From positions 248,396-307,622 of the forward strand of contig NW_004797372.1 in NCBI RefSeq assembly GCF_000002075.1: a stretch of 59,227 nt of DNA, given 5' to 3'. Below are positions 1 to 18,870 of this stretch, piece after piece. The notes under the pieces are model-generated. The model was not told the origin of the DNA and did not search any database. It worked only from the letters and a program-made list of their open reading frames with translations. Positions within the stretch are counted from its first letter, which is position 1. Every line of letters starts with the position of its first letter. Made by a program: the position numbers and the translations under genes. Source of the stretch: Aplysia californica (lineage: Eukaryota).

Positions 1-52
<52 letters not shown>

Positions 53-270
53 GATTTCTACCGGGTCTGTATACTTCGTGACTTTGTTCCAGGTTGTCGG
101 GTCTGTATATACTTCGTTTTTAAAATCTGAGGCCGAGTTTAGCATGTTTTTAAAAATACGGAATGCTGAATCCTATCTTTGTCACGCAACCAATGCAGCC
201 AATTTTGTCATTCAACTTTTTCAGCTTGTCATTCACCTTGACAAACTCAAAACTATCCTGTAACTTCTGC

Positions 271-2231
271 GGTAGTGTCAATTGCCACCGAGTGACGCGG
301 TGGCAATTGACAAAAATTGATTTTTTGTCAATTGCCACAGAGTAAATTGATCTGGAGCTCTTTGGCATTGGTGGGTAGATCTAGCTTATTGTGCTTGAGT
401 GCTCGGTGTTGTGCGTTCGCCTCTCTGTCCCTCTGTGTGTGTGTGTGTGGTGTGTCTTTACTCTTTTCCTGACCCCCGTCTCCCGATTTTTGTTCCCCGA
501 TATAACGTGAATTTCTGCTGGAGTTCGTGTGCGTTTGTGACTTACTTCTCTAGAATTGCCTGTGTTGGTTCTACACCAACAAGGACAAAGTGTAGGCTAA
601 GGCTAGCCTAGATTAGATCTAGGCTTACGTCTCATTGAAAACACGCCAAGTTGGTACAGTAGCTCTAGACTAGATGCTCGTCCAATGAAATTAGTTGAGA
701 ACAAATTGACCCATTGGACACACATTATGTATTATAACGAAGTGTATACAGACCCGGTAACCGGGAACAAAGTCACGAAGTATACAGACCCGGTAGGGGA
801 ACTCTTTTGTGATTTCTGGAAGTTTCAACCCCCAGACCCGGTAGAAATCGTGTGTGTGTGTGTGAGAGAGAGAGAGAGGGAGAGAGAGAGAGAAAGAGAG
901 GAGGGGGGGTACTAGCAAAATGTATATGACATGCCCCAGTTGGCAGGAGGGAATGAGAGAAAGATAGAGTGGGAAATAGGTGGGGACAAAGAAAGACAGA
1001 GACAAACAAAGAAAAAGAGAAGGCGAGCGATACACAGAGGAGAGAGAGAAAGAGAGAGAGAGGGGGGGGGGCCTGCTCGATTGAAATTATGACCTTGTAA
1101 CTTGTTCTTTTCTTCAAATTGTGATTCCTCCAACTCCAAAACGGAGGAAAAACGATTGTTCATCGAAAAGACATCCACAATCTTCATTTGTCATTTAGAT
1201 CTAGGCTAGCCGTGTAACTAGATCAAAGATTTAAGTTTGTTTGCCTAGATCTAGATCTAGATCATAGATCTAGAAGAACCTAGGTTTACCCTGAGCCAAG
1301 AGGGCGCTGGAAACTCTCCGAAATCACAAAAGAGGGTAAATTTTTACTTTCACTCCCGCTCACAGATACACTGTTTCAGGGGTCAAACTTCAAGTCACAA
1401 TATTTCGCCTGCGAACACAACACATACCACTAAATTCCTACCTTAATAGGATCCACAAGGATACCCCACCCGACTGCCAGGATGAAACAGTACCACACCA
1501 CCTCTTTAACTGCCCAGCACTTTGTGACCTGCGTAGCACCTACCTACTTGCCTCCCCAGACATCGGAAACACTCTATACAGCGACAAAGCACAGCTGATT
1601 AAAACCTGTCAATTCTTTGCCATATCGACAGACCGAAGGGCTAGAATCCAAATGGCCCCTGGATCGGAAAAGTAAAGTAAAGTAAAGTAGGGGTCAAACT
1701 GCAGTACTGTTTGCTGCAGATCACACATAAAGCCACTAAAACTGTCGCAAATCAATTATTTTCAAGAAAATTTCAAATCTAACTGTAAAATAATAAATTT
1801 TGGGTAAAAACAGGGGGGCATGCCCCCCTGTAACCCCCCAGATTTTCTTTTACCTCAGCCCCCCTGGAACCCCCCGATTGGTCAAAAGCACGTCTATCTC
1901 GGTTAAGAACAATTATATATTTCGAAAACTATTAATTTGCGACGGAAATGAAGTTGACGTGTTCAGAGCATCAATATTTAGTAGAAATTGGACAACTGGT
2001 AGCTGAGTGTGAAATGGGAGAGAAAGTAAAAAAATACCCAAAAGAGTTCCCTTACCGGGTCTGTATACTTTGTGACTTAATTCCCGGTTACCGGGTCTGT
2101 ATACACCCCCTATGTCTGAAGCTAAAGATAGTGTTGTTTTCAAACTTGACACCGCTTCACTCGGTGGCAATTGACAAAAAGTCAATTTTTGTCAATTGTC
2201 ACCGCGTCACTCGGTGGCAATTGACGCTACC
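271..2231. mobile_element. Non-autonomous DNA transposon with long palindromic TIRs, Mutator-like
   Basis: TIR GGTAGTGTCAATTGCCACCGAGTGACGCGGTGGCAATTGAC at 271 and its inverse ending at 2231; flanks TAACTTCTGC / TAACTCTGC (about 9-bp TSD); a paralogous empty-site-like GTAACTCCGCTCCT at 50061. Confidence 0.8.
1390..1688 (+). mobile_element. 5'-truncated LINE (I-group, Ingi/Nimb-like) 3' end
   Basis: Translates [19 protein letters not shown]...[13 protein letters not shown] (CCHC region); (TAAAG)n tail; 12-bp TSD AGGGGTCAAACT at 1378-1389 and 1689-1700. Confidence 0.85.
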
Positions 2232-2417
2232 TAACTCTGCTCCTACTCCTGGTCAACATTATTTGAAATGGAATGTAGGCCTACACTTGTTGTGTGTGTG
2301 TGTATGGGGGTGGGGGTGTGTGCTAAACAAAGGACAAAAAGCTTATTTTTCTAAAGATGCTTTGATTGATCAACTAGTTAAACACTGATCCTGCCATTAG
2401 TGAAAGTGCTGATCTTT

Positions 2418-3700
2418 TAAGGCTAAGGCCGGCTCTATTTCTCAGAACGTTTGGGAAAATAAACTTGAACTCTTCTAGGCTATTTCTCCGAACGGTTTCC
2501 GTTCTCGAGATTTGTTGATAATAAGGGAATGGAGTGGCCCGTGTGTGTGAGTGTGCATGTGTGTGTAAGGTGTGAAGGGGGGGGGGGTATTTTTTTTTTA
2601 CAATAAGGATTTTAGTTTTTGCTGGGTGACTAAATGCAAAATAGGTTACTGCCAAGGTCGAGCTGTCTTGTTTTCTCGCAGTACCTTTTGAAGGTATTTT
2701 CAATTGAAGTATAGTCTGGGCACGTTGCCCCAACCACAACTGAAGTATCTGAATATTCAGACATTTAAAAATCTCTAGCTCTAGAAATTGCATTTGGTGC
2801 AAAAAATCCTTCTTCCCAGTCCTCGTAGAATGGCAGAATGATGCACGCTTAAATCTTGCAAATAACCAAAAAATCTCGAGATTGGAAACCGTTCGGAGAA
2901 ATACAGTTCAACTTTATTTTCCGAACGTTCGGAGAAATAGTCACTTCGTTTTGAAAGGCCACCTCTATTCTCAACCTGGATGAGAATAGCGCAGACGGGC
3001 CTTTTAGCTATTCTCACCCAGTGTGCCTTCTTCGTGATTGGCCAGCCAGCATAGCGTTCATCTTGAACAATGTTCCAGCGCTCTTGACCTTGTGTTGAAA
3101 GCGTGCAATTTTCTATTTTGTCTGTTGGCTGTGAGAGAAAGAGAGAGGTGTGGGGGGGGGGGAGAGACAGAGAGGAGTAGCGCGAGAACATTCGTGCAAA
3201 ACAAAATGGCGACCTAAGTAGTTCGGCTCGATTCGAAATGTTAAATAGCCGTTGTATCTTTGTAGACGACCAAATTAATTTACTTTTGTTTTTTAATATT
3301 AATATCATTTTTTTGTCTTTGTTTTTGTCAATTTGATAATCCACACTGATACACTGTATTCAGAAAGAGAGTGCGAGAGAGAGAGAGAGGAGTAGATCTT
3401 GCGAGAACTTCCAGGCAAAACAAAATGACGACCCGCGTAGTTCGGCTTGATTCGAAAAGTGACATAGCCCCATAGCATCTTTGTAGACGACCAAATTAGC
3501 TTAAACTACAAGTGCTATAACGTCATTTTTTCTTTGTTTTTGTCTATCTAATTATCCACACCAATAGACAGTATTCCGAGATTAGGAAGAACAGGTCTTG
3601 TTTCGCACCGGGTGAGAATAGCCAACGCTGGCAAGTCTCACCCGTGGTGAGAGGTCGATCGTATTTTTATTCTAACCCGGCGTGAGGATAGCCACTTCCT
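2418..3700. mobile_element. Palindromic MITE-like region with repeated CTATTCTC/GAGAATAG motifs and an internal duplication of about 220 bp
   Basis: 2430-2510 is inverted relative to 2872-2940; 3165-3365 is repeated at 3380-3580 (CAAAATGGCGACC...GTAGACGACCAAATTA). Boundaries approximate. Confidence 0.55.
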
Positions 3701-4672
3701 TTGTGAAATTTGCAGTTTGATGATCTGTCATCTGTGTGTTAAACCGTCGGTGTTCTTTTACTTTCACTATCGTCTCATGCTCGGGTTTTTATAATTTATT
3801 GTAGAACTCTTTACTTGCACAGAGACAAGCATAGAAAACTGTTTATTTTGTGAGACTGCTTCTCGCGCCGAACAAGGAGTGATGGAGAACGTTTTCGCAC
3901 CCAACTTTCCACAGACACAATAGGTCTAGCGGACTGGTCGGTGAAATGTTGGGGGTGCTGTATAGTATCTCTGCAGGGTTTTTGTTAAGTGTGTGTGCTT
4001 CAATATACAGTGGGGGTCTGCTTTTAAATGGAAATCTGTGGGACTGCTGGATTTTCGTTGGGTTTTTTTCAGGTTTTCAATTTAGAAAGTTTACTCAAGA
4101 AGAAAAAAAAATCCAGGGTTTTATTTTCTTTCAGCTTACTGCTGGTTTTGGACTTACTGTAAATATATAATTTGGTTTAATTGTACTACAATGTAATAAC
4201 ACTGTACTTTGTTTTTATTCAAGTTTCTTTCTGTGTGCATCAAAACGTTTTGTCGTTTTACAATGTGTAGCATTTGTTTAGATATATGCTATGATGTTCA
4301 TCCAATGAAATTTGAACAAAGGTCAGTCAGTGTCCTTGGTTTTGTTCTCTATAAATGTGGAACTTCGAAGGATATTTAAGAAACAACACTCCCATCTATT
4401 GTTATCACACCTTTAAAATGAGCTTGTTTTGAAGGTTTTTCAAAACCACTGGGAGGAGAAGGTGAAAATTGAGAGCGAATGATTGGAAAAATCTGGAAAC
4501 AACTTTTTTCCCTTCTAACTTTACAAGGAAGTCCCCCCCCTTGCAACTTTCAGGAATGTTATTTTAAACAATGATTTTTTTGCAACTTTAGTTTTGCTAG
4601 AATAGCTGGCCTATTTCTCATTGTGCTCAATACTTAGTCATCAATATTTCCCTGGCCTTCTGACCCTACCAG

Positions 4673-6496
4673 TCTACTGAGCGGGATACCAGCAACCCAG
4701 ACGCTTCGCAGTCGGACGATGCTTCAGGGTCAGACCACGACGAAATTTATGAGGAGGGGAGCGATGACGAACCCTTTCCAGAAACTGATGAAGATGGGGC
4801 CCCGGAGGAGGAAGAAGGTGGTTCAGATTCAGAAGCAGCCACAGATAGAGATGAGTGGAGAGAGGGTGCAGCATTGCTCGATGTCCTGCCCTTTGAACCC
4901 AGCAAACAGCCTGGCCCGCAGGTGGTGCTGCCTGCCACAGCCACACCTCTCCAGTTCTTGCGACTGCTCGTCACGGTCGATATGATGAAGGAGATTGCCA
5001 AGGAAACAAACCGCTACGCCAACCATTTTGTCAAGTCTACTCAACTCACGCAGGTCAGTTGCTTGTCGTCTTGGGAGGACACTGACGCAGACGAGTTGTG
5101 GGCCTTTTTTGGGTTGATAACTGGTATGGGCATCATTCGGGTCGCCTCCTTTCAGGACTACTGGTCGACGGATGCCGTGTACAGCCTGCCGTTCTTCCCG
5201 AGTATCATGACAAGGGAACGTTTCCAGAACCTGCTGACGTTTTTACATTTCAGCGACGAGAAGTTCATCCCGAGGGGAGAGGAGGGCCATGACCCACTCT
5301 TCAAGATCAGTTCTTTCCTGAACTGTCTTGCGGAGAATTTTTCGAAAAATTATTACCCCACCACAAACATCGCTATTGATGAAGCCATGATTTCATGGAA
5401 AGGTAGATGTAACGTCAGTGCCCCAGTGTACGGCCATAGAAATCAGGACAGGTTTGGACTTAAGATCTTTCAGCTGTGTGACTCCAGCAATGCCTATTGT
5501 TGCAGGTTCGAGGTATACACTGGGAAGAAGGAAGTCTCTCCAAAGGGAGTAGACTATGACATGGCCATGAGGCTGTTGTCGCCGTACCTTGGATGCGGTC
5601 ATCGGCTCTTCATTGACAGCTTCTTCACAGCCCCAGTCCTCTTCAAAGACCTGCTTGCAGCCAAGACCACAGCCTGCGGTACTGTTCGGCTGAACAGGAA
5701 AGGCCTGTCAAAGATGCCACAGAATCGGAAGAAGGTGGTGAAGAGGAAGGGAGATGTAATTTCAATGACAACAGGGTCCATGAACCATATCAGGATCATT
5801 GGTCAGCAGCAAGTCAACTTCCTCACGTCCATCCACACTGACAGTATGAGCGATACTGGAGGACAGGATAGAACTGGGGAGCAAGTAAACATGCTAGATG
5901 CAGTGAGGGAGCACAGCAAGCACATGGGAGCAGTCAGCAGGTCAGATCGTTTGGTAGAACTCAGCTACGTCAAATTGAGGAGGATGAAGTGGTGGAAAAA
6001 AGTCTTCTTCCACTTCTTCATGTTGGCGGAGCGGAACGCCTACCTTCTCTACAAGGAGTCGACACAACAGCCCATGAATTATGCTGTGTTCCGGCGCGAG
6101 CTGGCCAAGGAGATGGCGAGCCAGTCTCCTCCACGACTGCCCCCAAGACATGCCGCCCTCCAGACGGGAAGTTCCTCACTGCATCGACTGACGGCACGAC
6201 ACTTCCCCAGCAAAATCCTTCACCCTGCTGGCTTTGAGAAGCGCAGACCCCGTACCAGACTCTGCGTTGTCTGCAGCACCAGGACGGGGAAGAGAAAAGT
6301 TCCAGGCGATGGCAGGAGGAGGAAGGAGACCACAGTGGAGTGCGTCGACTGCAATGTTGGTCTCTGTGTCATTCCCTGTTTTGAGTTGTATCATACTCAA
6401 AAGGACTATAAGAGGAGCTATCGGAGACTTCAAGAAGTTCAAGTTCAAGGCCAGGACAACTCAGCAGAAGTCTCTTCTTCCTCCTCCTCCGAGTGA
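4673..6496 (+). CDS. Domesticated piggyBac transposase-derived (PGBD-like) terminal exon, 607 aa, start codon supplied by an upstream exon
   Basis: The ORF-track frame (4874-6496) stays open upstream to an in-frame TGA at 4661. A 3' splice site (CCTTCTGACCCTACCAG|TCT, AG at 4671-4672) precedes an acidic N-terminus STERDTSNPDASQSDDASGSDHDEIYEEGSDDE. piggyBac motifs: ETNRYA, DYWS, HDPLFKI, IAIDEAMI (D 5378), LFIDSFF (D 5615), CGTVRLNRKG, HMGAVSRSD, KWWKK and a C-terminal Cys/His domain. No stops or frameshifts. Confidence 0.9.
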   Translation, partial: STERDTSNPDASQSDDASGSDHDEIYEEGSDDEPFPETDEDGAPEEEEGGSDSEAATDRDEWREGAALLDVLPFEPSKQPGPQVVLPATATPLQFLRLLVTVDMMKEIAKETNRYANHFVKSTQLTQVSCLSSWEDTDADELWAFFGLITGMGIIRVASFQDYWSTDAVYSLPFFPSIMTRERFQNLLTFLHFSDEKFIPRGEEGHDPLFKISSFLNCLAENFSKNYYPTTNIAIDEAMISWKGRCNVSAPVYGHRNQDRFGLKIFQLCDSSNAYCCRFEVYTGKKEVSPKGVDYDMAMRLLSPYLGCGHRLFIDSFFTAPVLFKDLLAAKTTACGTVRLNRKGLSKMPQNRKKVVKRKGDVISMTTGSMNHIRIIGQQQVNFLTSIHTDSMSDTGGQDRTGEQVNMLDAVREHSKHMGAVSRSDRLVELSYVKLRRMKWWKKVFFHFFMLAERNAYLLYKESTQQPMNYAVFRRELAKEMASQSPPRLPPRHAALQTGSSSLHRLTARHFPSKILHPAGFEKRRPRTRLCVVCSTRTGKRKVPGDGRRRKETTVECVDCNVGLCVIPCFELYHTQKDYKRSYRRLQEVQVQGQDNSAEVSSSSSSE

Positions 6497-7628
6497 TGGT
6501 CCTTTGGAGTGAGGACCACCATCATCATGATCATCTGTCCTTTTGCCATTTGAGAATCATCATCTGTCCTTCATCAACTCTGTCCTTTTGAAGACCATTG
6601 ACTGTCCTTCCGCAGGTGTCATTTTTTTTAGGACTGCTGTCTGCTATTTTTTTTTAGGGCCATCTGTCTTTTGACTGTTCCTTTGAGGACTATCAATTGT
6701 CATTTTGAGGACTATCATCATCTTTCATTGTAATGTAAGCTCATCAACTGGCCTTTTTAGGACCATTATCTAACCAAATGGTGTCCATCATTATCTGGCC
6801 TTTTTGAAAGCCATTGGATGTCCTGCTGAGAAACTGTACTGTGTAATTACAGATGAAATGACAGTCAAACCTTGTTATAACACCAATCTTGGAGGAGCAA
6901 GCCTAAAGTTGTTAGTACTGTGGGGCCGGTTGTACAGTGGGGCCTTTATGATGTCCTCTGTTTAACAACTCCTACAGCCCACCATCTAGGGAAATCATTC
7001 TGCTGATGTATAAATCACTGCCTGAATTTGCATCAACACCAAGCTGAGTCCACTTTTCCTTCCTTCTTTCCACTGCACACACACTATAACCCATCATATC
7101 ATGTACAGTATAGAGGCAATCAACTTAGGCTTACTGTGGATCATGTTGGTCAGGTGCTATTCGCCATGTTGAATGTTATTTTGCTTCCTTTGCTTTTTTC
7201 TGAGTTCTTTAATTTCTTGTTTATGTTGGTCACTGTTATTAGTGTTATAGCCGAGTATCTATGATCTGTCCAAATGCCGGTCGTTACAGAACTTGTCAAC
7301 TAGACATGAGATCGGACTCTGGGGATTTATTGTAAGCTTCTACAGCTGTAATCCTTTTAACGGACACTTTTACAATTTTACAATTGGGGCCAACTGTATG
7401 CCCATTGAAGTATTCACGTTTGTACTGAGAATGGAGAACTATGTTGAAGAGATAATATAGCCAAAGATCTGTGAGTTAATTTTGATTGAATATTGTCAAT
7501 GGGACATCATGTCAATGATTTATGTGCGGTACCATTCTGTTTTGTGAACTGAGTAGATTGGGAATATATTATGTGTCTATTTTTAAATGAATGCTCATTG
7601 AAAGCGTTCATGTCATGGTTGTGGGAAC

Positions 7629-8020
7629 CCCCTGGGGCACTGCCACTGACTGTAGTGTCTTTAGGCCATTCCCAAAGGGGGGACATTTCTCGTTCAAGCA
7701 TTGTAGAATTGTAAATGGGCTGACTCATGTCACGCTCATAACTGTGCCTGATCTACAACAGGGAACTGCTTCTTTTTCTTTCTTAATCCTTACTATTGTC
7801 ATTTTCCTCTACTTCTTTTGTATGTTTGTCACTCTCTTGTGACTTGCTATTTCCGGGGTGCCTTGGATAGTCGAAGCAGACCTTGTGCTGTTGAAGCTAG
7901 AGAGGTGAGCAGAATGAGTCTGATTCCCTGTAAAGACTTCTCTGTTGACACCCACCCCTTGGGGCTCATATGACCTTATGCAGTTGCGAGCGCCGTAAAA
8001 CCCTCTGCTATAAAAAAAAA
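7629..8020 (+). mobile_element. Short retroposon family B (~390 bp); other copies near 8470, 11770 (partial), 15038, 26640, 29829 and 57915 (minus strand)
   Basis: Consensus across copies: CCCCTGGGGCAGTGCCACTGACTGTAGTGTCTTTAGGCC...GGCGCTCATATGACCTTATGCAGTTGCGAGCGCCGTAAAA plus A-rich tail. Confidence 0.88.
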
Positions 8021-9000
8021 GGTTGTGGGTGGTTGGCGGGTGCTGTGGTGGTATTTGCTTTTTCTTTCCTATCAAACATCTATCATCGTTTTCTCTCCTT
8101 CTTTATTGTTGCTCTCTAGTAACACCTCTAATCTCCGGCAGTTATATGACCTATTTCATTTGTGTTGCAATTTAAGTCTTTTGTCATCTTTTCAGTTTTC
8201 ATGTATCTATTATGATAAATTGCAATGCTCTACTAGTTTTATATAATCTAATACCCCTCTTCACAAATTATGTGGGTGGTTGACTTGTGCTCCTTTGTGG
8301 TTTACTCCTTCTTTCCTGTTAAACATCTATCATCCTTATATTATATCTCTCCTTTTTTGTGTTTGTTACTGTCTTGTAACACATCTATTCTTTTGGCACT
8401 TATAAATATGACCTTATTGTGTTGCAAGTGCCGTAAAACTAACTTACCCCCCCCCCCCCCCCCCCCTCCCGGGCAGTGCTAGTGACTGGAGTGTCTTTAG
8501 GCCACTCCCAAAGGTGGGGGGGGGGGGGGGGGGGGGACATTAACATCTCAAGTTCTTATGCACAGTGTAATTGTAAATGGGCTGATTCATGAATGTCACG
8601 CTCATAACTGTGCCTGAACTGCAACTGGGAACTGCTGCTTTTTCTTTCCTAACCCTTTCCTCTACTTCTTTTTTATGTTTGTCACACTCTTGTGTCCCTC
8701 TATTTCCGGGATGCCTTGATAGTGGAAGCAGACTTTATGCTGTTGAAGCTAAAGAGGTGAGCAGAGTAAGTCTTGATTCCCTGTAAGGACTGTTGACATC
8801 CATCCCTTGGCGCTCATGTGACCTTACGCAGTTGCGAACGCCGTAAAAGCTCTACTAAAACAAAACAAAAACTCTCACTAAAACGTAGCAAATTACAGTG
8901 TTTTTTAGAATCATGCTGCTAGTCTTTGTACTTAGAAAGAATAAGAATAAAAGGGATCATTTTGAGAACATTGCATTGACTCCCTGTGTCAGCTAAAATT

Positions 9001-9248
9001 GGTCGCTTTTAAGGACAAGGGGGCTATCCCGAGAAATGTAATGCTGTTTTGAGAAGATCGAAGTTAAAAGTTTTTGGATCCTTATTAAGTTTCTTTAAAA
9101 TACAAGGAGAGTTTTCTCTATAACCAAATATACACATCAATGAAACCGAAGCTCTCCCATAGGTAGGGTAATGCCCACTTTTGGTGTAGGTCAAGACTTC
9201 TGGAAAACCCCGAATCAGGGTTAGCCCGCTTGTCCTTAAGAGCGACCC
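9001..9248. mobile_element. MITE; other copies near 52110-53375 and 57430-57570
   Basis: TIR GGTCGCTTTTAAGGACAAG / CTTGTCCTTAAGAGCGACC; the body is shared with the two other copies. Confidence 0.8.
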
Positions 9249-10061
9249 TTTGTAGTACCGTATACTATTATGTGTAATGTCAATAAACAAACTCCTTTAT
9301 AATATCTTTATCTTACTGATCTCATCCAGCTTTATGTTTCATCTTGATCACTGAGATCAGGTGGTCAGTATCTTTTAAGAGGTCTTATGACAGGATGTAA
9401 AAGATTAGCTGAAATATCTGTTGCCCATCTTTGCTCCCTCCCTTCCCAAACCCCTGTGACATACAACTTCTGAATCTAAATTTAAAGTTTAAAACATACA
9501 TAAAAGACATATCATTTAATGAAATAATTTCTAACTCAGTACCTTCATTTTCCAGTAAAATAGTATGTAACTGTCTTTTTATGTATTTTTGTTACCAATG
9601 GATGGCATTATAATAATATATGTTATATATTACATTATGTAGGCATATTTTTGTGTGTTTTCACTTCATAACGAAATATGGTGTGTGTGTGTGCATGTAC
9701 GTATACATTCGTGTATGTGTGTGTGTGTGTGTAACTGTATGAGTGTGTGTGTGGATTGTGTATGTGGATGGTGTGCGCTTTCGTATGTATGTGAATGCTG
9801 TAAATGTGCGTCATTTCTTCAGTGTGCGCACATGAGCAAAAATTAAATGTTCATGTATACCATGTCAGTATTCAATTATATATGAATTTGCTATTGCATA
9901 TTTTTGTGCAAACACCAAAAGCTGTGTTCACACGGAAGCAGTGCTATAAAAATTATCTACAAAATTTATTATTTTTGTTTTAAAAGTGTCTTTTTGTTAG
10001 TGAGTTACAGTATTTAGAGCAGAGAGTCGTCTGTCTGGTCTGTTTGTTGAAAGTTTGTCTG

Positions 10062-10766
10062 TCTCTCTCTCTCCCTCCCTCCCCCCTCTTCTCACTCTCT
10101 CTCTTTCTCTCTGTCTCCCTCTCTGTTTATGATCTAATCTCTCCACTTTATGTCTCTTTGTTTGTGTGTGTACAGATTCAAATTGGTTGGCAGGTGCTCT
10201 GGTGTGGTTTGCTCCTTCTTTCCTATCAAACATGTATCATCCTGATCTCTCCTCCTTTTTAAAAATTATTTGTTACTCTCTTGTAACACCTCCAATCTTC
10301 GGCACATATATGACCTTATTGTGTTGCAAGTGCCGTAAAACTCTTACTTAAGCCAAAACAGGAGTGGGTGCTGCTAGTTTGCTGACAGTATTGCAGGGCT
10401 AATTTACATTACTCTCTCTCTCCCTCTCCCTCCCTCCCCCCTCCTCTCACTCTTTCTCTTTCTCTCTGTCTCCCTCTCTCTTTATAGTCTCTCTCCACTT
10501 TATGTCTCTTTGTTTGTGTGTGTACAGATTCAAATTGGTTGGCGGGTGCTCTGGTGTGGTTTGCTCCTTCTTTCCTATCAAACATGTATCGTCCTGATCT
10601 CTCCTCCCTTTTTTTAAAAATTAGTTACTCTCTTGTAACTCCTCTAATCTTCGGCACATATGACCTTATTGTGTTGCAAGTGCCGTAAAACTCTTGCTTA
10701 AGCTAAAACAGGAGTGGGTGCTGCTAGTTTGCTGACTGAGTATTGCAGGGCTAATTTACATTACTC
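10062..10766. repeat. Tandem duplication, 2 x ~350 bp, each copy containing a CT tract and a family A element
   Basis: Both units contain TGTACAGATTCAAATTGGTTGG and end GGGCTAATTTACATTACTCT. Confidence 0.88.
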
Positions 10767-11516
10767 TTCTTTTTGTAAGGACTGTACAGCTCAGGCAGTG
10801 GGTGGTTGGTGGGTTTTGTGGTGTGTTTGCTCCTTCTTTGCTATCAAACGCCTATGATATCATAATCAGTGTAACTTCCATTCTTTCTTTTTTAAACGTT
10901 TTTGTTACTCTCTTATTTCATTTCTAATCTTCAGCATTTGTAGGACTCGATTGTGTTACCAGTGCTGTAAAATTTTATTACTAAAACAACTTAAACAAAC
11001 AGAGTAGAATATTTGTTGGAGTTCCTTTTCGTGCATTGGCAAAACCTGTCAGTAAATGGGATGGTATAACAAATTTAATGATTCTAGTTACTTTACGAAT
11101 GGTTACTCAGGAGGGACCAAAAGTGTACAACTTTTATGGTTGTCTGGTTTATGATTTGCCTGTTCGTCTATTCCGATCATAACAACCTCCTGAGTGGGTG
11201 GTTGGCGGGTGCTCTGGTGTGGTTTGCTCCTTCTTTCCTAACAAACATCTATCGTCCTTATCTCTCCTCCTCCTTTTTTTATGTATGTTACTCTTTGTAA
11301 CTCCTCTATTCTTCGGCACATATATGACCTAATTGTGTTGCAAGTGCCGTAAAACCCTTACTAAAACTAAACTTCTTTTTTATGTTTGTTACTCTCTTGT
11401 AACACCTCTAATCTTTTGGCGCTCATATGACCTTATGCAGTCGCGAGTGCCGTAAAACCTCTTCTTAAACTAAAAAACGACTTGACAATAGAAAGATAAA
11501 TCACGCTCAACCCTAC

Positions 11517-11740
11517 CGATGTCTGTGGTGTAGCGGTTAGGCTCTTCACAGCTGCTGGCACGAGACGCGGATTCAACTCCTGAACTGAGTGGGGAGAATT
11601 TTTATTTGATCTCAGTCTTTCTGCTCGTATGTTGCAGTATCCCTCTCTGGTCAGGTTGGCCCTGATAGACAGGGTCAGTTAAGTAGCTCGTGTCCTAAAT
11701 TATCTAAATTGAGTGGATGGTGATGTTAAAAAACCTGTAT
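11517..11740 (+). mobile_element. tRNA-headed SINE with Meta/MESC-like core; related copies near 17265-17440, 27757-27935 and 28403-28625
   Basis: A-box-like TGGTGTAGCGG, B-box-like GGATTCAACTCC, and a shared core like TATCCCTCTC..CAGGTTGGCCCTGACAG..AGGGT. The core family name is from recall. Confidence 0.7.
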
Positions 11741-13739
11741 TTAAAAAAACCCCAAACAAACAAAAAAGTGAGCAGAGTAAGCCTGATTCTCCGTTTAGAC
11801 TTCTCTGTTGACATCCACCCCTTGGCGCTCATATGACTATTCAGTTGCGAGCGCTGTAAAACCTTACTTAAACTAAACTATAAAAAAAAGACAAAAGAAC
11901 ACGCTCTAACCTGACTTCCCTTGGCACCTTCCTGTGTGTCTGCTGTCTGGCCTCAGAGCTCCGTGGAGCAGTGTGCTTGATGGACGAGGTAGTGAGGCCA
12001 TCCATCAATAACACCACGAACCCCCGGCCCGTGGGTGGTTGGCAGGTGCTCTGGTGTGGTTTGCTCCTTCTTTCCTCTATCAAACATCTGTTGTCCTTCC
12101 TTATATCTCCTCGTTTTTTGTTTGTTACTCTCTTGTAACACCTCTAATCTTCGGCATTTATATGACCTAATTGTGTTGCAAGCACTGTTAAACTCTTACC
12201 AAGCAAACGGACCATGCAGAAGCAGTCAATTTGTGTTTAGTCACATCTGTAGGACAGAACCACGATGGATTTGTCACAAAGCTGATTGCCTTGATAAGCG
12301 TGCCCAGTTTTTCCGAGAGACACAGCGTGAAAGTTTGGATCAAGTGCTGGAGATTTTTATTAAGTTTGAACATCGCTGGTAATTGCTCCGCCTCATCCTT
12401 AGGCCCAGTGCACATTTATTGATACCTTTGATTCATTTGATAATGTGATACAGTCTGGATTATCCTTCATGGAGGGGCAATAGCTGCCATTTTGGCTCGG
12501 TTTGATAAAATCCGCCAAAAACAATGTTTGAATTGGAGGATTTGATAAATTTTCACCAAAATGGTAGTTTTTGCTCATCCAATGAGTGAATTCTAGCTGG
12601 CTCTTGACTCGATTTGACTGGATTCATTTGACAGTTTGCACTGGGTTTTTAGAACGAAAGCAAAGTCTAGGGCAGGTATATTCCTGCAAATGTTTATAGA
12701 GCCTAAAAGGTTCTAAGAAGACTGTTGCAACTTTACCTCTCATGGACAGAACAGGGGTGATGGATTAACCTGAACCTTCTTTTGCCACTTTTCGGGTCAA
12801 ATGCAGTGACAGTGACAGTCTTCATGGGAACAGCAAGATTGCTAAACCTCCTTGTGTCACATTATAGTGTCTTTGTTAATACATGTACTGTTGAACCTGC
12901 TTTTAATTTATGGTCACCGTCTTGTAGAGTCAATCACCTGTAGGAATGTGGGTGGCTGGCGAGTACTCTGGTGTGGTTTGCTCCTTCTTTCCTATAAAAA
13001 AACCTATTCTCTATCTCCCTTCCTTTTTTGTGTGTTATTCTCTTGTAACACTTCTTCGGCACTTATATGACTGTATTGTGTTGCAAGTGCCGTAAAACTC
13101 TTTCTAAAACTAAAAAATTGTAGGAGTGGCCTCTTCCCATCCCCTCTTTTGCGCTTTTGGTACACTATGATTATAATAATGACACTGTAAACTGTCCACC
13201 TCTGTCTAAGTTAAGAGTAAGACGGTTACTTTTCTCCCCAACAATGGGTGAGTGTCTAAAAGTAGGACAATTTTCGCTGTATTAACTCTTGAGAGCCTGA
13301 GCACATTCAACCTTTACTTTACCAAAACTGAATACAGGCCTTTGACTGGGGTCTGCACTGCCTTTGCTCTTCACATTGAATGCACGCTTGAGTACAAACT
13401 GATACCCTTCTGGGTAAAAGCCTGCCTACAGCCAGGCATATATTGCCTTTACTCTGATTTCACCATGTGCATGCTAGAATGTACATAAAATTGTCCATGT
13501 GGGTGGTTGGCGGGTACTGTGGCGTGGTTTGCTCAAACATCTATCGTCCTTATCTCCCCTCCTTCTTTTTTGTGTATTTTACTCTCTTGTAACACATCTA
13601 TTCTTCGGCACTTATATGACCTTATTGTGTTGAAGTGCAGTAAAATTCTTACTAAAACTAAACTAAAACTTAAATAATTGTCCATTGTGGTATGATGCAT
13701 GCTTACTTGTAATTGTTTCCTTTGATCTTTTTATCACAG

Positions 13740-16494
13740 AATCTTTTCAAGGTTGGAGGTCATCTGTTTTATCAGAATGCACGCCAAGATGAGAACGGGT
13801 GAGTGGTTGAAAGTATAGATTGTGCCTCTGTAACATAACCTTCACTTTAAAAAAAACCCCAACCTAATTTGGATCAGAAAATTATTCATGTCCGTTGTTG
13901 TGTCTCATTGATATCACGTTATTTTTAGTTGTGGTGTCAATATGACGCCAAAACATGAAAGTTTGGACCAAGAAGAATGCACGCTTTGGTGTTATGTGTA
14001 CAGTCTCCTATTTCAACTCTTCTGAGAGCATGCTTTAAAGATTTGACGTGGGTGGTTGGCGGGTGCTCTGTTGAGGTTTGCTCCTTCTTTCCTATCAAAC
14101 ATGTATCATCCTTATCTCTCCTCCTTCTATTTTATGTTTGTTACTCTCTTGTAACACCTCTAATCTTCTGGCGCTCATATGACCTTATGTAGTTGCGAGC
14201 GCCGTAAAACCTCCACTAAAACTAAAAACTAAAAAATTTGACAATGTTATATTTGGCAATGAAAAGTAATTTAACAAATTTGTTAGATTTACTTGTGCTG
14301 TTTGAGAGTAAACAGGATGAAAATTGTATCCTAGGTTATGGTTAGAAAGTAGCCTACAAACTAAATCTGTGCAAATACTGTTAAGTTGAGAATTAATATT
14401 ATCTTTTGTATTCTGGTGCTAATGTAATTATACACTTGCCAATTAGTATAACTTTATATAAAATTATATGATCATACCTTGGAACAGCTAAAAAGGAGGT
14501 TCAAGACTGGCTGACTTATTGACCTGGGCTAAAACTGTGTAGAGACTGCTGTCTTAAATTATTTTTATTCTATTTAAATTTAATCAAAGTTTTAGCATTT
14601 CAAGAAATGTTAAACGAAAAGAGGCAGGCTGTTTTCATGTTACCAAGTCATGTACTTGACATGCAAAAGTAGAGTCATAATATTAATATAGTGAAATGCC
14701 TTTGTTTCAGCGTTCAAATTGACAATGTGTCTGGCCGCTTTGAAAAGTGTCTGGAAGAGTTTTACGCCATTTGCGATCAGATTGAGATAAACCTGGTAAG
14801 TACAAGGCATTGTAAAGCTCTGTTTGCTGCTCTTTGGAAAGTGAAACCAGCATTTGGTTTAGATATAAGAACGTAGCACTTTTCTCGTTGTGCGATTTTG
14901 TAGCTGTGCCAGTAACGTTGGGGGCACATGTTGTGTCTGTTGTTTTCACCCAATGACTGCCAATCTGTCGATTTTGCTTTTCGTTTCTATCTCTGTCCCC
15001 ACCTGAGACTGAATAGTATAAGCTCAAATTTTACCTCCAGGGGCAGTGCCACTGACTGTAGTGTCTTTAGGCCATTCTCAAAGGGGGGGACATTTCTCGT
15101 TCAAGCACAGTAGAATTGCAAATGGGCTGATTCATCATGTCACGCTCATAACTGCCTGATCTACAACAGGGAACTGCTGCTTTTTCTTTCCTAATCCTTA
15201 CTATTGTAATTTTCCTCTACTTGTTTTGTATGTTTGTCACTCTCTTGTGACCTGCTATTTTTGGGGTGCCTTGATAGTCGAAGCAGACCTTGTGCTGTTG
15301 AAGCTAGAGAGGTGAGCAGAATAAGTCTGATTCCCTGTAAAGACTTCTCTGTTGACACCCACCCTTTGGCGCTCATATGACCTTATGCAGTTGCGAACGA
15401 CGTAAAACCCTCTACTATAAAAGAAAAAGCTCATATTTTTAGTCTTCTTCTCGTCTTGATCAATGTAATGTTTGTTAGTAAAACTGTAGATAGAGGAGGA
15501 GTGAAAAGATCACAATTCAAACTTTGTATTATTGCAAAGCTCATTTGTGCCTTTACTGGAGATGTGCTGTAAAAATGTTCTTGGTTAATGTTTCTCTGAC
15601 CCCCTCTATTCATCTTTTCGGAGGCCTGCCCCTTCCTGTGTTTCCATTTGATCCTTGGCTGTAGGCTCTCGCTGCTACCCTGTCTAGTCGTTGTCTTGAC
15701 ATTGACAGGCCTAAACCATTCAATTTGTTATAAAATTTGCTCTCATGTAATGCAAGCAGGGAGTTAAACCAGCTAATTCTTTGATAATGTTGATAGAGGT
15801 GTTAAACCCATACACTTATTTAGTGGGTGGTTAGCGGGTGCTCTGGTATGGTTTGCTCCTTCTTTCCTATCAAACATATATATTTATTGTCCTTATCGCT
15901 CCTTTTTTGTGTTTGTGCTACTCTCTTGTAACACCCCTAATCTTTGGCACTTTACATGACCTTATTGTGTTGCAAGTGCCGTAAAACGCTTACTAAAACA
16001 TGCTTAGTAAAACTAACTAATTCTCTGATTCTGATCGTCTCATTGGTAGTGTTAATATATGAACATTCAGCCCATACCCTTACTTTTGAAAAAGAAACAA
16101 ACTGAAAATAAGAGAAAAAGAAAAAGCCCCAAAAACTTAAAAAATGATTGCTTTGTTCCAGAGACTGATCGTCTCGTTGAAAGTTTTGATAAGGCATACA
16201 CTTAGATCTATTTAAAAAAAAACAAAAAACCCATCAAACCCCTTTAGAAAACTAACAAACGTGCTTGTGTTGTTCCAGAGACTGGCCCACGAAGTGATCC
16301 AGCAGGACCGCGACAGCTCCCGCAACACGCCCATCTCCGTGCTGCCGCCCAAGACGGAGCCCCAACAGCCCGAGGGCCAGCTGTACTCCCAGTACCTGTC
16401 CACTGTCAGGGCGCAGATCAACTGTGCCAAGGACATCCGGGACGTCCTTCACGACTGCCTCAAGAACTTCCCCGAGCACTCCTCCCATCCGTGA
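13740..16494 (+). CDS. MED29: Mediator of RNA polymerase II transcription subunit 29, partial; exons 13740-13798, 14711-14795, 16279-16494; first exon not found
   Basis: GT-AG spliced translation NLFKVGGHLFYQNARQDENG-VQIDNVSGRFEKCLEEFYAICDQIEINL-RLAHEVIQQDRDS...YSQYLSTVRAQINCAKDIRDVL matches recalled MED29 motifs (RFDKCLEEFYALCDQLELCLRLAHE; YxQYLxxIKAQISCAKDI). Exon phases are consistent (entered in phase 0, 2, 0). Confidence 0.93.
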
Positions 16495-17848: not shown

Positions 17849-18870
17849 TTAACTCACTGAGCACCTCGCCCCGATTTGCCTCCAAGCCCCAGGGGACCAC
17901 CCATTTCACCCACTTTTTAAAAAATTCATAAAAAATTGAGATGAAATGCTATTTCTTTGAAATTTTCTGTGCTTTTTAATAAGATATGGGTTCAATAGAC
18001 ACAATTAACACATTTTGTGAAGAATGAATGACAAAAAATGTATAGTATGAGACAGAAAGTTGGGTCAAATTTGCCCCAGAAAAAAATTTTTGAAAAAAAA
18101 AAAGGAAATGATGTGACAAAGCAGAAATCTAATAAACTTACACAACGTAGTTGTGGCAGTGTGTGTTTGTGTGTAGGAGAATGCAGCATGAGTGTGTACA
18201 GTGAAGTAGCATAAAAAAGTAAATGATAGGCTAATTATTTTTGACAAATAAAAATAAAAAGATCTAGATCTTCCTTGGTGCCTGGCTGAGAAGTGTTTTC
18301 ATTGTCAGTGCTGTTAATGCTAGGACTAGATCTGTCAATAGATGTTCCAGGTCTGGGTACATATATATATATATCTTCTCCACTTTGAGGGCTGGTTTGA
18401 ACTAGAGTTTAGTACTGGGGCTAGATAGATATCATCCCCAGCCGGACCAGGCTGCGTACTCGCTGACGAGTCAGATTCACGATTGAGAGACGATGTTGGT
18501 CTAGATTTAGGTCTAATGTAATTTTTTTCAGTCATCTTCATCCCTGCTAGGTGAATTCACATTTTGATTTATGAAGTTATCTATCTGATACTTCACTGTC
18601 ACTTAAATCTTCACCAAAATTATTGAGAGTTTCAATAAACCTCGACACTACTCGCCGTGCCATGCTTCGTGTACGAGAAACTACAACGAACTGCGCGGAA
18701 GTTCCTTACTTTCAGTTGTTCAGTCCGTTTGACAAATAACCCATTTATTCGCACTAAAAGTGGTGAATATACACAAACCACAAAGAACTAGCTTGTCGAT
18801 ATCCTGTTTAGACCACTAGGGCTATTTGCAAGCATTTTTAAACTAATGGGTTTACTTTATAGTCAGTTAT
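17849..18870. mobile_element. Probable non-autonomous piggyBac derivative; only one terminus recognisable
   Basis: TTAA+CTCACTGAGCACC...CCCCAGGGGACC resembles the terminus at 21851; the second TIR was not found and the right boundary is approximate. Confidence 0.45.

What the first reader, a model, noticed from the sequence alone, without database searches (positions are those of the whole stretch)
4650..13798. Candidate MED29-piggyBac fusion: transposase captured as an alternative terminal exon in MED29 intron 1
Seen: the intact PGBD frame opens after an in-frame stop (4661), has a branch point and acceptor (CTGAC...TACCAG| at 4672) in phase 0, and has no Met until 4982. The 103 Met-less codons include the acidic tract and the F..PGP...PLQFL segment, which is also present in the mobile copy at 23.8 kb, so they look genuinely coding. 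Seen: MED29 exon 2 (13740) is on the same strand and is also entered in phase 0. I found no MED29 exon 1 (DPV...KESL-like) in 1-13739, so PGBD appears to sit in MED29 intron 1. Known: primate ERCC6/CSB-PGBD3 uses this exon-trap layout. Inference: one promoter yields full MED29 and a MED29(N-terminus)-transposase chimera. The chimera could link Mediator contacts to piggyBac TIR DNA or tune MED29 dosage through intronic polyadenylation (AATAAA near 8945 and 9282). I do not recall a described MED29-PGBD fusion.
Basis: partly seen in the sequence, partly recalled or inferred. Interest (0 to 1): 0.9.

Follow-up and report, generated by a model that had tools for sequence, protein, structure and literature searches.

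The report
Sea-slug MED29–piggyBac fusion transcript
In the sea slug Aplysia, an old, probably inactive jumping-gene enzyme sits inside the first intron of a core transcription gene (MED29) and is spliced in frame onto that gene's first exon, giving a second, chimeric protein-coding transcript of the kind known from the human CSB-PGBD3 gene.

Summary
Confirmed in the main. The window is Aplysia californica. A 607-codon piggyBac frame (4673-6496) lies 7 kb upstream of MED29 exons 2-4, same strand, no gap between. An assembled contig from one public run starts exactly at the 4672/4673 acceptor; its 5' overhang reads in frame as the end of MED29 exon 1 (10/10 residues identical to two other gastropod MED29s), with no depth in the intron. 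So the fusion junction exists. The copy has lost the family's own ATG, its TIRs and the third catalytic Asp, is single-copy, yet has no stop or frameshift (rough P 0.002-0.06 if neutral): probable domestication. Five other gastropods have no piggyBac in MED29. Limits: one contig in one run; exon 1 is not in the assembly; isoform ratio, 3' end, protein and cross-species selection untested. No MED29-transposase fusion was found in the literature; the kind is well known. The scan noted an unverified HCF-1/piggyBac candidate elsewhere in this genome.

The parts
4300..4659 (+). Remnant of the element's own 5' non-coding flank, now intronic; no TIR recognisable
   Evidence: Aligns loosely to the upstream flank of dead relative C139; zero depth 4093-4616 in the run that covers the ORF; no TTAA-TIR pair
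4643..4672 (+). 3' splice site: pyrimidine-rich stretch, CTGAC branch-like motif, in-frame TGA 4661-4663, CAG 4670-4672
   Evidence: Sequence; contig of run X16 starts at 4672 with a 29-letter overhang not in the laid stretch
4673..6496 (+). piggyBac-derived terminal coding exon, 607 codons, entered in phase 0, no Met before codon 104
   Evidence: covered without mismatch from 4672 to 6234 by one contig
4673..4981 (+). 103 Met-less codons: acidic disordered tract and start of the folded transposase
   Evidence: 48% identical to dead relative C139 over 75 codons, pN 0.33 vs pS 0.73; relatives C139 and C1325 have their own ATG at this place; helices from residue 92 in the model
5378..5938 (+). 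Catalytic triad positions: D236 (5378), D315 (5615), third Asp replaced by Ser422 (5936; AGC where relatives have GAC)
6239..6415 (+). C-terminal cysteine-rich domain, all invariant Cys/His kept
   Evidence: Pfam zf-Tnp_2 over cut-off; invariant columns; 77% identity to C139, pN 0.11 vs pS 0.79
6497..9287 (+). Probable long 3' UTR with inserted repeats; candidate poly(A) signals at 8946 and 9282 (use not shown)
   Evidence: Contigs at about one third of the ORF depth up to 7600, the end of the laid stretch; AATAAA positions
13740..13798 (+). MED29 exon 2, phase-0 entry
   Evidence: 85% identical to exon 2 of other gastropods
14711..14795 (+). MED29 exon 3
16279..16494 (+). MED29 exon 4 to the stop codon

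Best explanation
A piggyBac element inserted long ago in sense orientation into MED29 intron 1 in the Aplysia lineage. The MED29 promoter now yields two mRNAs: exon 1 to exons 2-4 (normal MED29; inferred) and exon 1 to the 4673 acceptor, ending in the intron (junction shown, 3' end inferred). The second encodes a roughly 670-740-residue chimera: MED29's low-complexity leader and half of helix 1, then a whole transposase fold that lacks the third catalytic Asp. The element lost its own start codon and ends, so the host exon mainly supplies promoter, start codon and a disordered leader. The frame has probably been kept by selection. Most likely role (inferred): a nuclease-dead DNA/chromatin-binding protein, for instance one that occupies piggyBac ends or poisons related transposases, acting outside the Mediator complex.
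For: Junction contig in frame with the MED29 exon-1 end, and no intron depth; phase-0 exon-1 donor in Bulinus; contig begins 30 letters before the junction, as expected where a shared exon branches; family ATG present in two dead relatives and absent here, and no family AG is in an open phase-0 frame with that ATG; single copy, nearest relatives 65-69% identical and mostly broken; 12 private changes at 113 conserved positions including D422S, yet no stop or frameshift: P about 0.018 by calibration on dead copies, 0.065 for stops alone and 0.002-0.008 with frameshifts by simulation; fold still predicted as piggyBac transposase; no piggyBac in MED29 of five other gastropods.
Against: Junction seen in one contig of one run whose library type is not on record; two raw poly(A) runs laid no read on the ORF (uninformative: almost nothing of this organism was laid either). 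No orthologue found in another species, so no cross-species dN/dS. The low dN/dS against relatives (0.16-0.22) may reflect the element's active past. No protein evidence. No evidence at all for the proposed binding role.
Confidence: 0.66

Rival explanations
1. Neutral exon trap: the junction is real but is low-level splicing into a decaying element whose frame is still open by luck; no function.
For: One contig only; zero reads in two raw runs; conserved-site changes concentrate in the catalytic core just as in dead copies; relative C432 also has 297 stop-free codons.
Against: Four or so disruptions expected, none found; loss of the ATG with an in-frame junction instead; several putative RNA runs from different studies hold the ORF; contig depth 10.8 over the ORF.
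Confidence: 0.2
2. The chimera works through Mediator: its MED29 part pairs with MED27/MED15 and tethers Mediator to piggyBac-derived DNA sites, or competes with MED29.
For: The exon-1 end is the conserved start of helix 1; host-transposase fusions favour transcription-regulatory host domains (bioRxiv 10.1101/2020.05.07.082677).
Against: Only about 17 of 36 residues of helix 1 and none of helices 2-3 are present; solved MED29 is ordered from about residue 59 of the snail homologue and assembles as a coiled coil plus third helix (PMC7921410).
Confidence: 0.07
3. The selected effect is at RNA level: the trap diverts part of MED29 transcription and so sets MED29 dosage; the protein is incidental.
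For: Any use of the acceptor with intronic 3' end formation removes MED29 output; AATAAA at 8946 and 9282.
Against: This would not need 607 open codons or an intact zinc finger.
Confidence: 0.04
4. Stand-alone nested PGBD gene with its own promoter, translated from Met104 (the 504-residue protein in the database); the junction contig is an assembly chimera or minor side product.
For: A 504-residue product from this contig is on record (P0001); PGBD3 also has a cryptic-promoter transcript (PMC2268245).
Against: No depth or joint from 3700-4616 into the ORF; coverage starts exactly at the acceptor with MED29 sequence in frame; a Met104 start would remove conserved W62/G65/F74 and helix 92-99.
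Confidence: 0.03

Closest known systems
Primate CSB(ERCC6)-PGBD3 fusion (PMC2268245)
   Same: piggyBac transposase as a single large alternative 3' terminal exon in a host intron, in-frame acceptor, host gene is a transcription-related factor, parental gene intact downstream.
   Different: PGBD3 keeps its own Met 7 nt after the acceptor, TIRs with TTAA duplication and a poly(A) site about 130 nt after the stop; the host part is 465 residues; conservation and protein are shown. Here the ATG and TIRs are gone, the first AATAAA is 2.4 kb downstream, the host part is only exon 1 (57-131 residues in homologues), and conservation and protein are untested.
Host-transposase fusion genes of tetrapods, e.g. 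KRABINER, SETMAR (bioRxiv 10.1101/2020.05.07.082677)
   Same: Birth by intronic insertion and alternative splicing; KRABINER needed a frame-setting deletion, which may also have happened here (alignment uncertain).
   Different: That survey covers tetrapods; host parts are mostly complete regulatory domains (KRAB, SET, SCAN). Here the host is a mollusc and the host part is an incomplete domain of a Mediator subunit.
PGBD1 / PGBD2 (PMC5381638)
   Same: Host-derived upstream exons joined to one transposase exon with an altered catalytic motif.
   Different: Mammal-wide, with measured purifying selection; PGBD1 carries a SCAN domain and lacks the cysteine-rich domain, which is intact here.
Active piggyBac transposases (piggyBat 9c0f, T. 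ni 6x67)
   Same: Sequence and predicted fold match; first two catalytic Asp and the fourth Asp (D425) kept.
   Different: Third catalytic Asp (T. ni D447, needed for excision, PMC2533014) is Ser; no TIRs, no start codon, no close copies.

Membership tests
Host-transposase fusion gene (exon-trap type, CSB-PGBD3-like) | Transposase ORF inserted in sense orientation in an intron of a pre-existing host gene | tested here: met
   Same strand, upstream of MED29 exon 2 with no gap between; exon 1 not between them; absent from MED29 in five other gastropods
Host-transposase fusion gene (exon-trap type, CSB-PGBD3-like) | Host coding exon spliced in frame to the transposase | tested here: met
   One contig of run X16; overhang read by eye matches the exon-1 end of P0131 and P0134 at 10 of 10 residues, P0078 at 8 of 10
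Host-transposase fusion gene (exon-trap type, CSB-PGBD3-like) | Parental transcript co-exists (same donor to exon 2) | tested here: inconclusive
   Exons 2-4 intact and in phase, single MED29 locus; the exon 1-exon 2 junction was outside the one stretch that could be laid
Host-transposase fusion gene (exon-trap type, CSB-PGBD3-like) | Splice acceptor supplied by the transposon | tested here: inconclusive
   The CAG aligns to a CAG 10 or 17 nt before the family ATG depending on gap settings; flank only about 60% alike
Host-transposase fusion gene (exon-trap type, CSB-PGBD3-like) | Polyadenylation within the intron after the transposase | not tested
   AATAAA at 8946 and 9282 lie beyond the laid stretch
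Host-transposase fusion gene (exon-trap type, CSB-PGBD3-like) | Purifying selection among orthologues (dN/dS < 1) | not testable with these tools
   No orthologue found; 'organism B' contigs differ by 0-1 letter in 150-250, so are no cross-species test. Indirect evidence only
Host-transposase fusion gene (exon-trap type, CSB-PGBD3-like) | Fusion protein detected | not testable with these tools
   No proteomic tool
Active piggyBac transposon | DDD catalytic triad | tested here: not met
   D236, D315, S422
Active piggyBac transposon | TIRs with TTAA target duplication | tested here: not met
   None found around the ORF, whereas relatives show a TTAA-CTCTAG end
Active piggyBac transposon | Own start codon and near-identical copies | tested here: not met
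Active piggyBac transposon | C-terminal cysteine-rich domain | tested here: met
MED29 (Mediator subunit), for the chimera | N-terminal two-helix coiled coil plus third helix | tested here: not met
   Exon 1 ends inside helix 1 (residue 72 of helix 56-91 in the P0131 model)

The most novel reading that the evidence does not exclude
A selected, translated MED29-piggyBac chimera in sea hares in which the MED29 leader and half-helix still contact Mediator tail subunits or activators, so that a dead transposase recruits or titrates Mediator at piggyBac-derived sites; possibly one of several such exon-trap fusions in this genome.
Probability: 0.1. Interest if true: 0.9.

Novelty: new member of a known kind. 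Interest (0 to 1): 0.66.

Why it matters
Host-transposase fusions are a documented route to new regulatory genes, but the systematic survey found covers tetrapods and the piggyBac exon-trap idea rests mainly on primate PGBD1-3. An RNA-supported case in a mollusc, in a standard neuroscience model, and inside a core Mediator gene shows the same route at work in a distant lineage. It also shows a step beyond PGBD3: the element has given up its own start codon and depends on the host exon. Practically, the database models are wrong on both genes (MED29 partial with an intronic start; PGBD 103 residues short), and anyone knocking down Aplysia MED29 through exon 1 would hit two products.

Tried and rejected
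Finding exon 1 in the assembly: motif scans and tblastn over the window and 100 kb upstream, and three whole-genome searches, all blank. The nine residues before exon 2 in the NCBI partial MED29 are just the translated intron end, so they do not test the shared donor. Using PAF1 as a landmark: head-to-head with MED29 in five gastropods, but here its exon 1 and other exons lie on two other scaffolds and no MED29 exon 1 is assembled within 40 kb of PAF1 exon 1. The look-up of encoding contigs had no record for the window's protein. Bias of changes towards the catalytic core (Fisher p 0.022) was dropped as evidence for selective retention of the zinc finger because dead copies show the same bias. 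Low pairwise dN/dS to relatives was not counted as domestication. GC3 (0.60) does not differ from relatives. 'Organism B' runs are not a second species at this locus.

Full report
Source. The window is G000:C102:248396-307622. A database MED29 named Aplysia californica, 'partial', lies on a contig of the same length as C102 and is 100% identical to the three exons in the window, so the organism is A. californica.

Observation. The frame 4673-6496 is open for 607 codons and matches the piggyBac family; the predicted fold matches piggyBat and T. ni transposases. It is preceded by an in-frame stop at 4661 and a CAG at 4670-4672, and has no Met until codon 104. MED29 exons 2, 3 and 4 lie at 13740-13798, 14711-14795 and 16279-16494 on the same strand, with no N gap between them and the transposase. 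In Bulinus the exon-1 donor is phase 0 and exon 2 begins at the same residue as here.

Exon 1 is not in the assembly. Motif scans, tblastn over the window plus 100 kb upstream, and whole-genome searches with two gastropod exon-1 queries found nothing. It is therefore not between the transposase and exon 2. A 4,276-N gap adjoins window position 1, but I cannot say exon 1 is in it: PAF1, head-to-head with MED29 in five other gastropods, has exon 1 on scaffold C549 and its other exons on C28, so scaffolding around this promoter is unreliable or the region is rearranged. The gaps were left alone.

The junction. Laid on 3700-7600, run X16 gave a 1,592-letter contig, depth 10.8, no mismatch, from 4672 to 6234, with 29 loose letters in front, and no depth at 4093-4616. 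Read by eye in the transposase frame, the loose letters plus the shared G make ten codons, identical at 10 of 10 residues to the end of exon 1 in gastropod MED29s P0131 and P0134 and at 8 of 10 to Bulinus (residues printed). That is an in-frame MED29 exon 1-transposase splice. The 30-letter overhang is what an assembler with 31-letter words leaves where one exon has two continuations, which fits (but does not prove) a second route to exon 2. The run's library type is not on record; the splice and the empty intron mark it as RNA. Twenty runs from six studies hold the ORF in part. Two raw poly(A) runs laid no read on it, but laid almost nothing even on a common repeat in the stretch, so they are no test. 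Only one laying was allowed, so the exon 1-exon 2 junction, isoform ratio and 3' end were not measured.

History of the element. It is single-copy: nearest relatives in the genome are 65-69% identical in DNA and mostly carry stops and frameshifts. Two of them keep an ATG two to four codons before the place of the junction; this copy does not. Their 5' flank aligns loosely to 4300-4660, and the acceptor aligns to a CAG 10 or 17 nt before their ATG, neither in phase, so a frame-setting change probably accompanied capture (alignment uncertain). No TIR-TTAA pair remains. MED29 of Bulinus, Biomphalaria, Lymnaea, Candidula and Elysia holds no piggyBac, and no protein closer than 44% was found among 5.8 billion: the insertion is lineage-restricted, age unknown.

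Selection. The third catalytic Asp is Ser (two base changes); the equivalent D447 is needed for excision (PMC2533014). Twelve of 113 family-conserved positions have changes private to this copy. Dead copies show about one disruption per three such changes, so four are expected and none is seen (P about 0.018); simulation gives P 0.065 for no stop and 0.002-0.008 when frameshifts are 3-5% of substitutions. This is suggestive, rough, and no substitute for orthologues. All zinc-finger ligands are kept, but the apparent sparing of that domain also occurs in dead copies and was not counted.

Mechanism. Shown: intronic position, in-frame junction (one contig), loss of ATG, TIRs and triad. Inferred: shared promoter and two isoforms, intronic 3' end, translation, selection. 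In a model of a gastropod MED29, residues 1-51 are disordered and helix 1 runs 56-91, across the exon 1/2 border at 72/73; in Mediator, MED29 works as a two-helix coiled coil plus a third helix (PMC7921410). The chimera is thus unlikely to be a Mediator subunit. I favour a nuclease-dead DNA-binding protein for which exon 1 provides promoter, start and leader; the binding role itself has no direct evidence.

Comparison and novelty. It works like CSB-PGBD3 (PMC2268245) and fits the host-transposase fusion class (bioRxiv 10.1101/2020.05.07.082677) on the two features testable here; selection and protein are open. It is not an active transposon. Literature searches found no MED29-transposase fusion and no molluscan case (PMC5381638 lists Aplysia only for mobile elements), within the limits of the library. 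Verdict: new member of a known kind; fusion transcript about 90% likely real, functional domestication about 65-70%; interest 0.66.

Noticed in passing
G000:C549:4507-4575 (-), C28:1624072-1637004 (+), C102: PAF1 and MED29 are head-to-head in five other gastropods; in this assembly PAF1 exon 1, the rest of PAF1, and MED29 exons 2-4 are on three scaffolds. Mis-scaffolding or rearrangement around the shared promoter.
   Followed up: partly
L033:4025-5758 (G000:C28:1638024-1639757): An intact 577-codon piggyBac ORF with its own ATG and all catalytic Asp lies on the same strand in a PAF1 intron, just after a small TTAA-bounded element (L033:3481-3762). Looks like a young autonomous copy; a possible second exon trap, not tested.
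   Followed up: partly
window:21851-24903 (-): TIR- and TTAA-bounded piggyBac with frameshifts and an apparently intron-split N-terminal coding part; further piggyBac fragments at 17.6-21.3 kb on the same strand, with another TIR-like end at 17849.
   Followed up: partly
window:41712-47322 (+): Exon-like frames resembling DRAP1 (NC2 alpha) with a Gln/Pro-rich last exon (from memory; Pfam gave no match on these pieces).
   Followed up: no
window:2950-3700 and 58-2231: High-copy repeats upstream of the ORF, including nested inverted-repeat elements (58-118/736-796, 271-346/2156-2231, 742-826/2022-2106).
   Followed up: no
L028:2273-3348 (G000:C1325): A dead relative carries three tandem 439-nt duplications of part of its coding sequence in front of its start codon.
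   Followed up: no
P0133 (NCBI Aplysia MED29, partial): Its first nine residues are the translated end of intron 1, an annotation artefact.
   Followed up: yes
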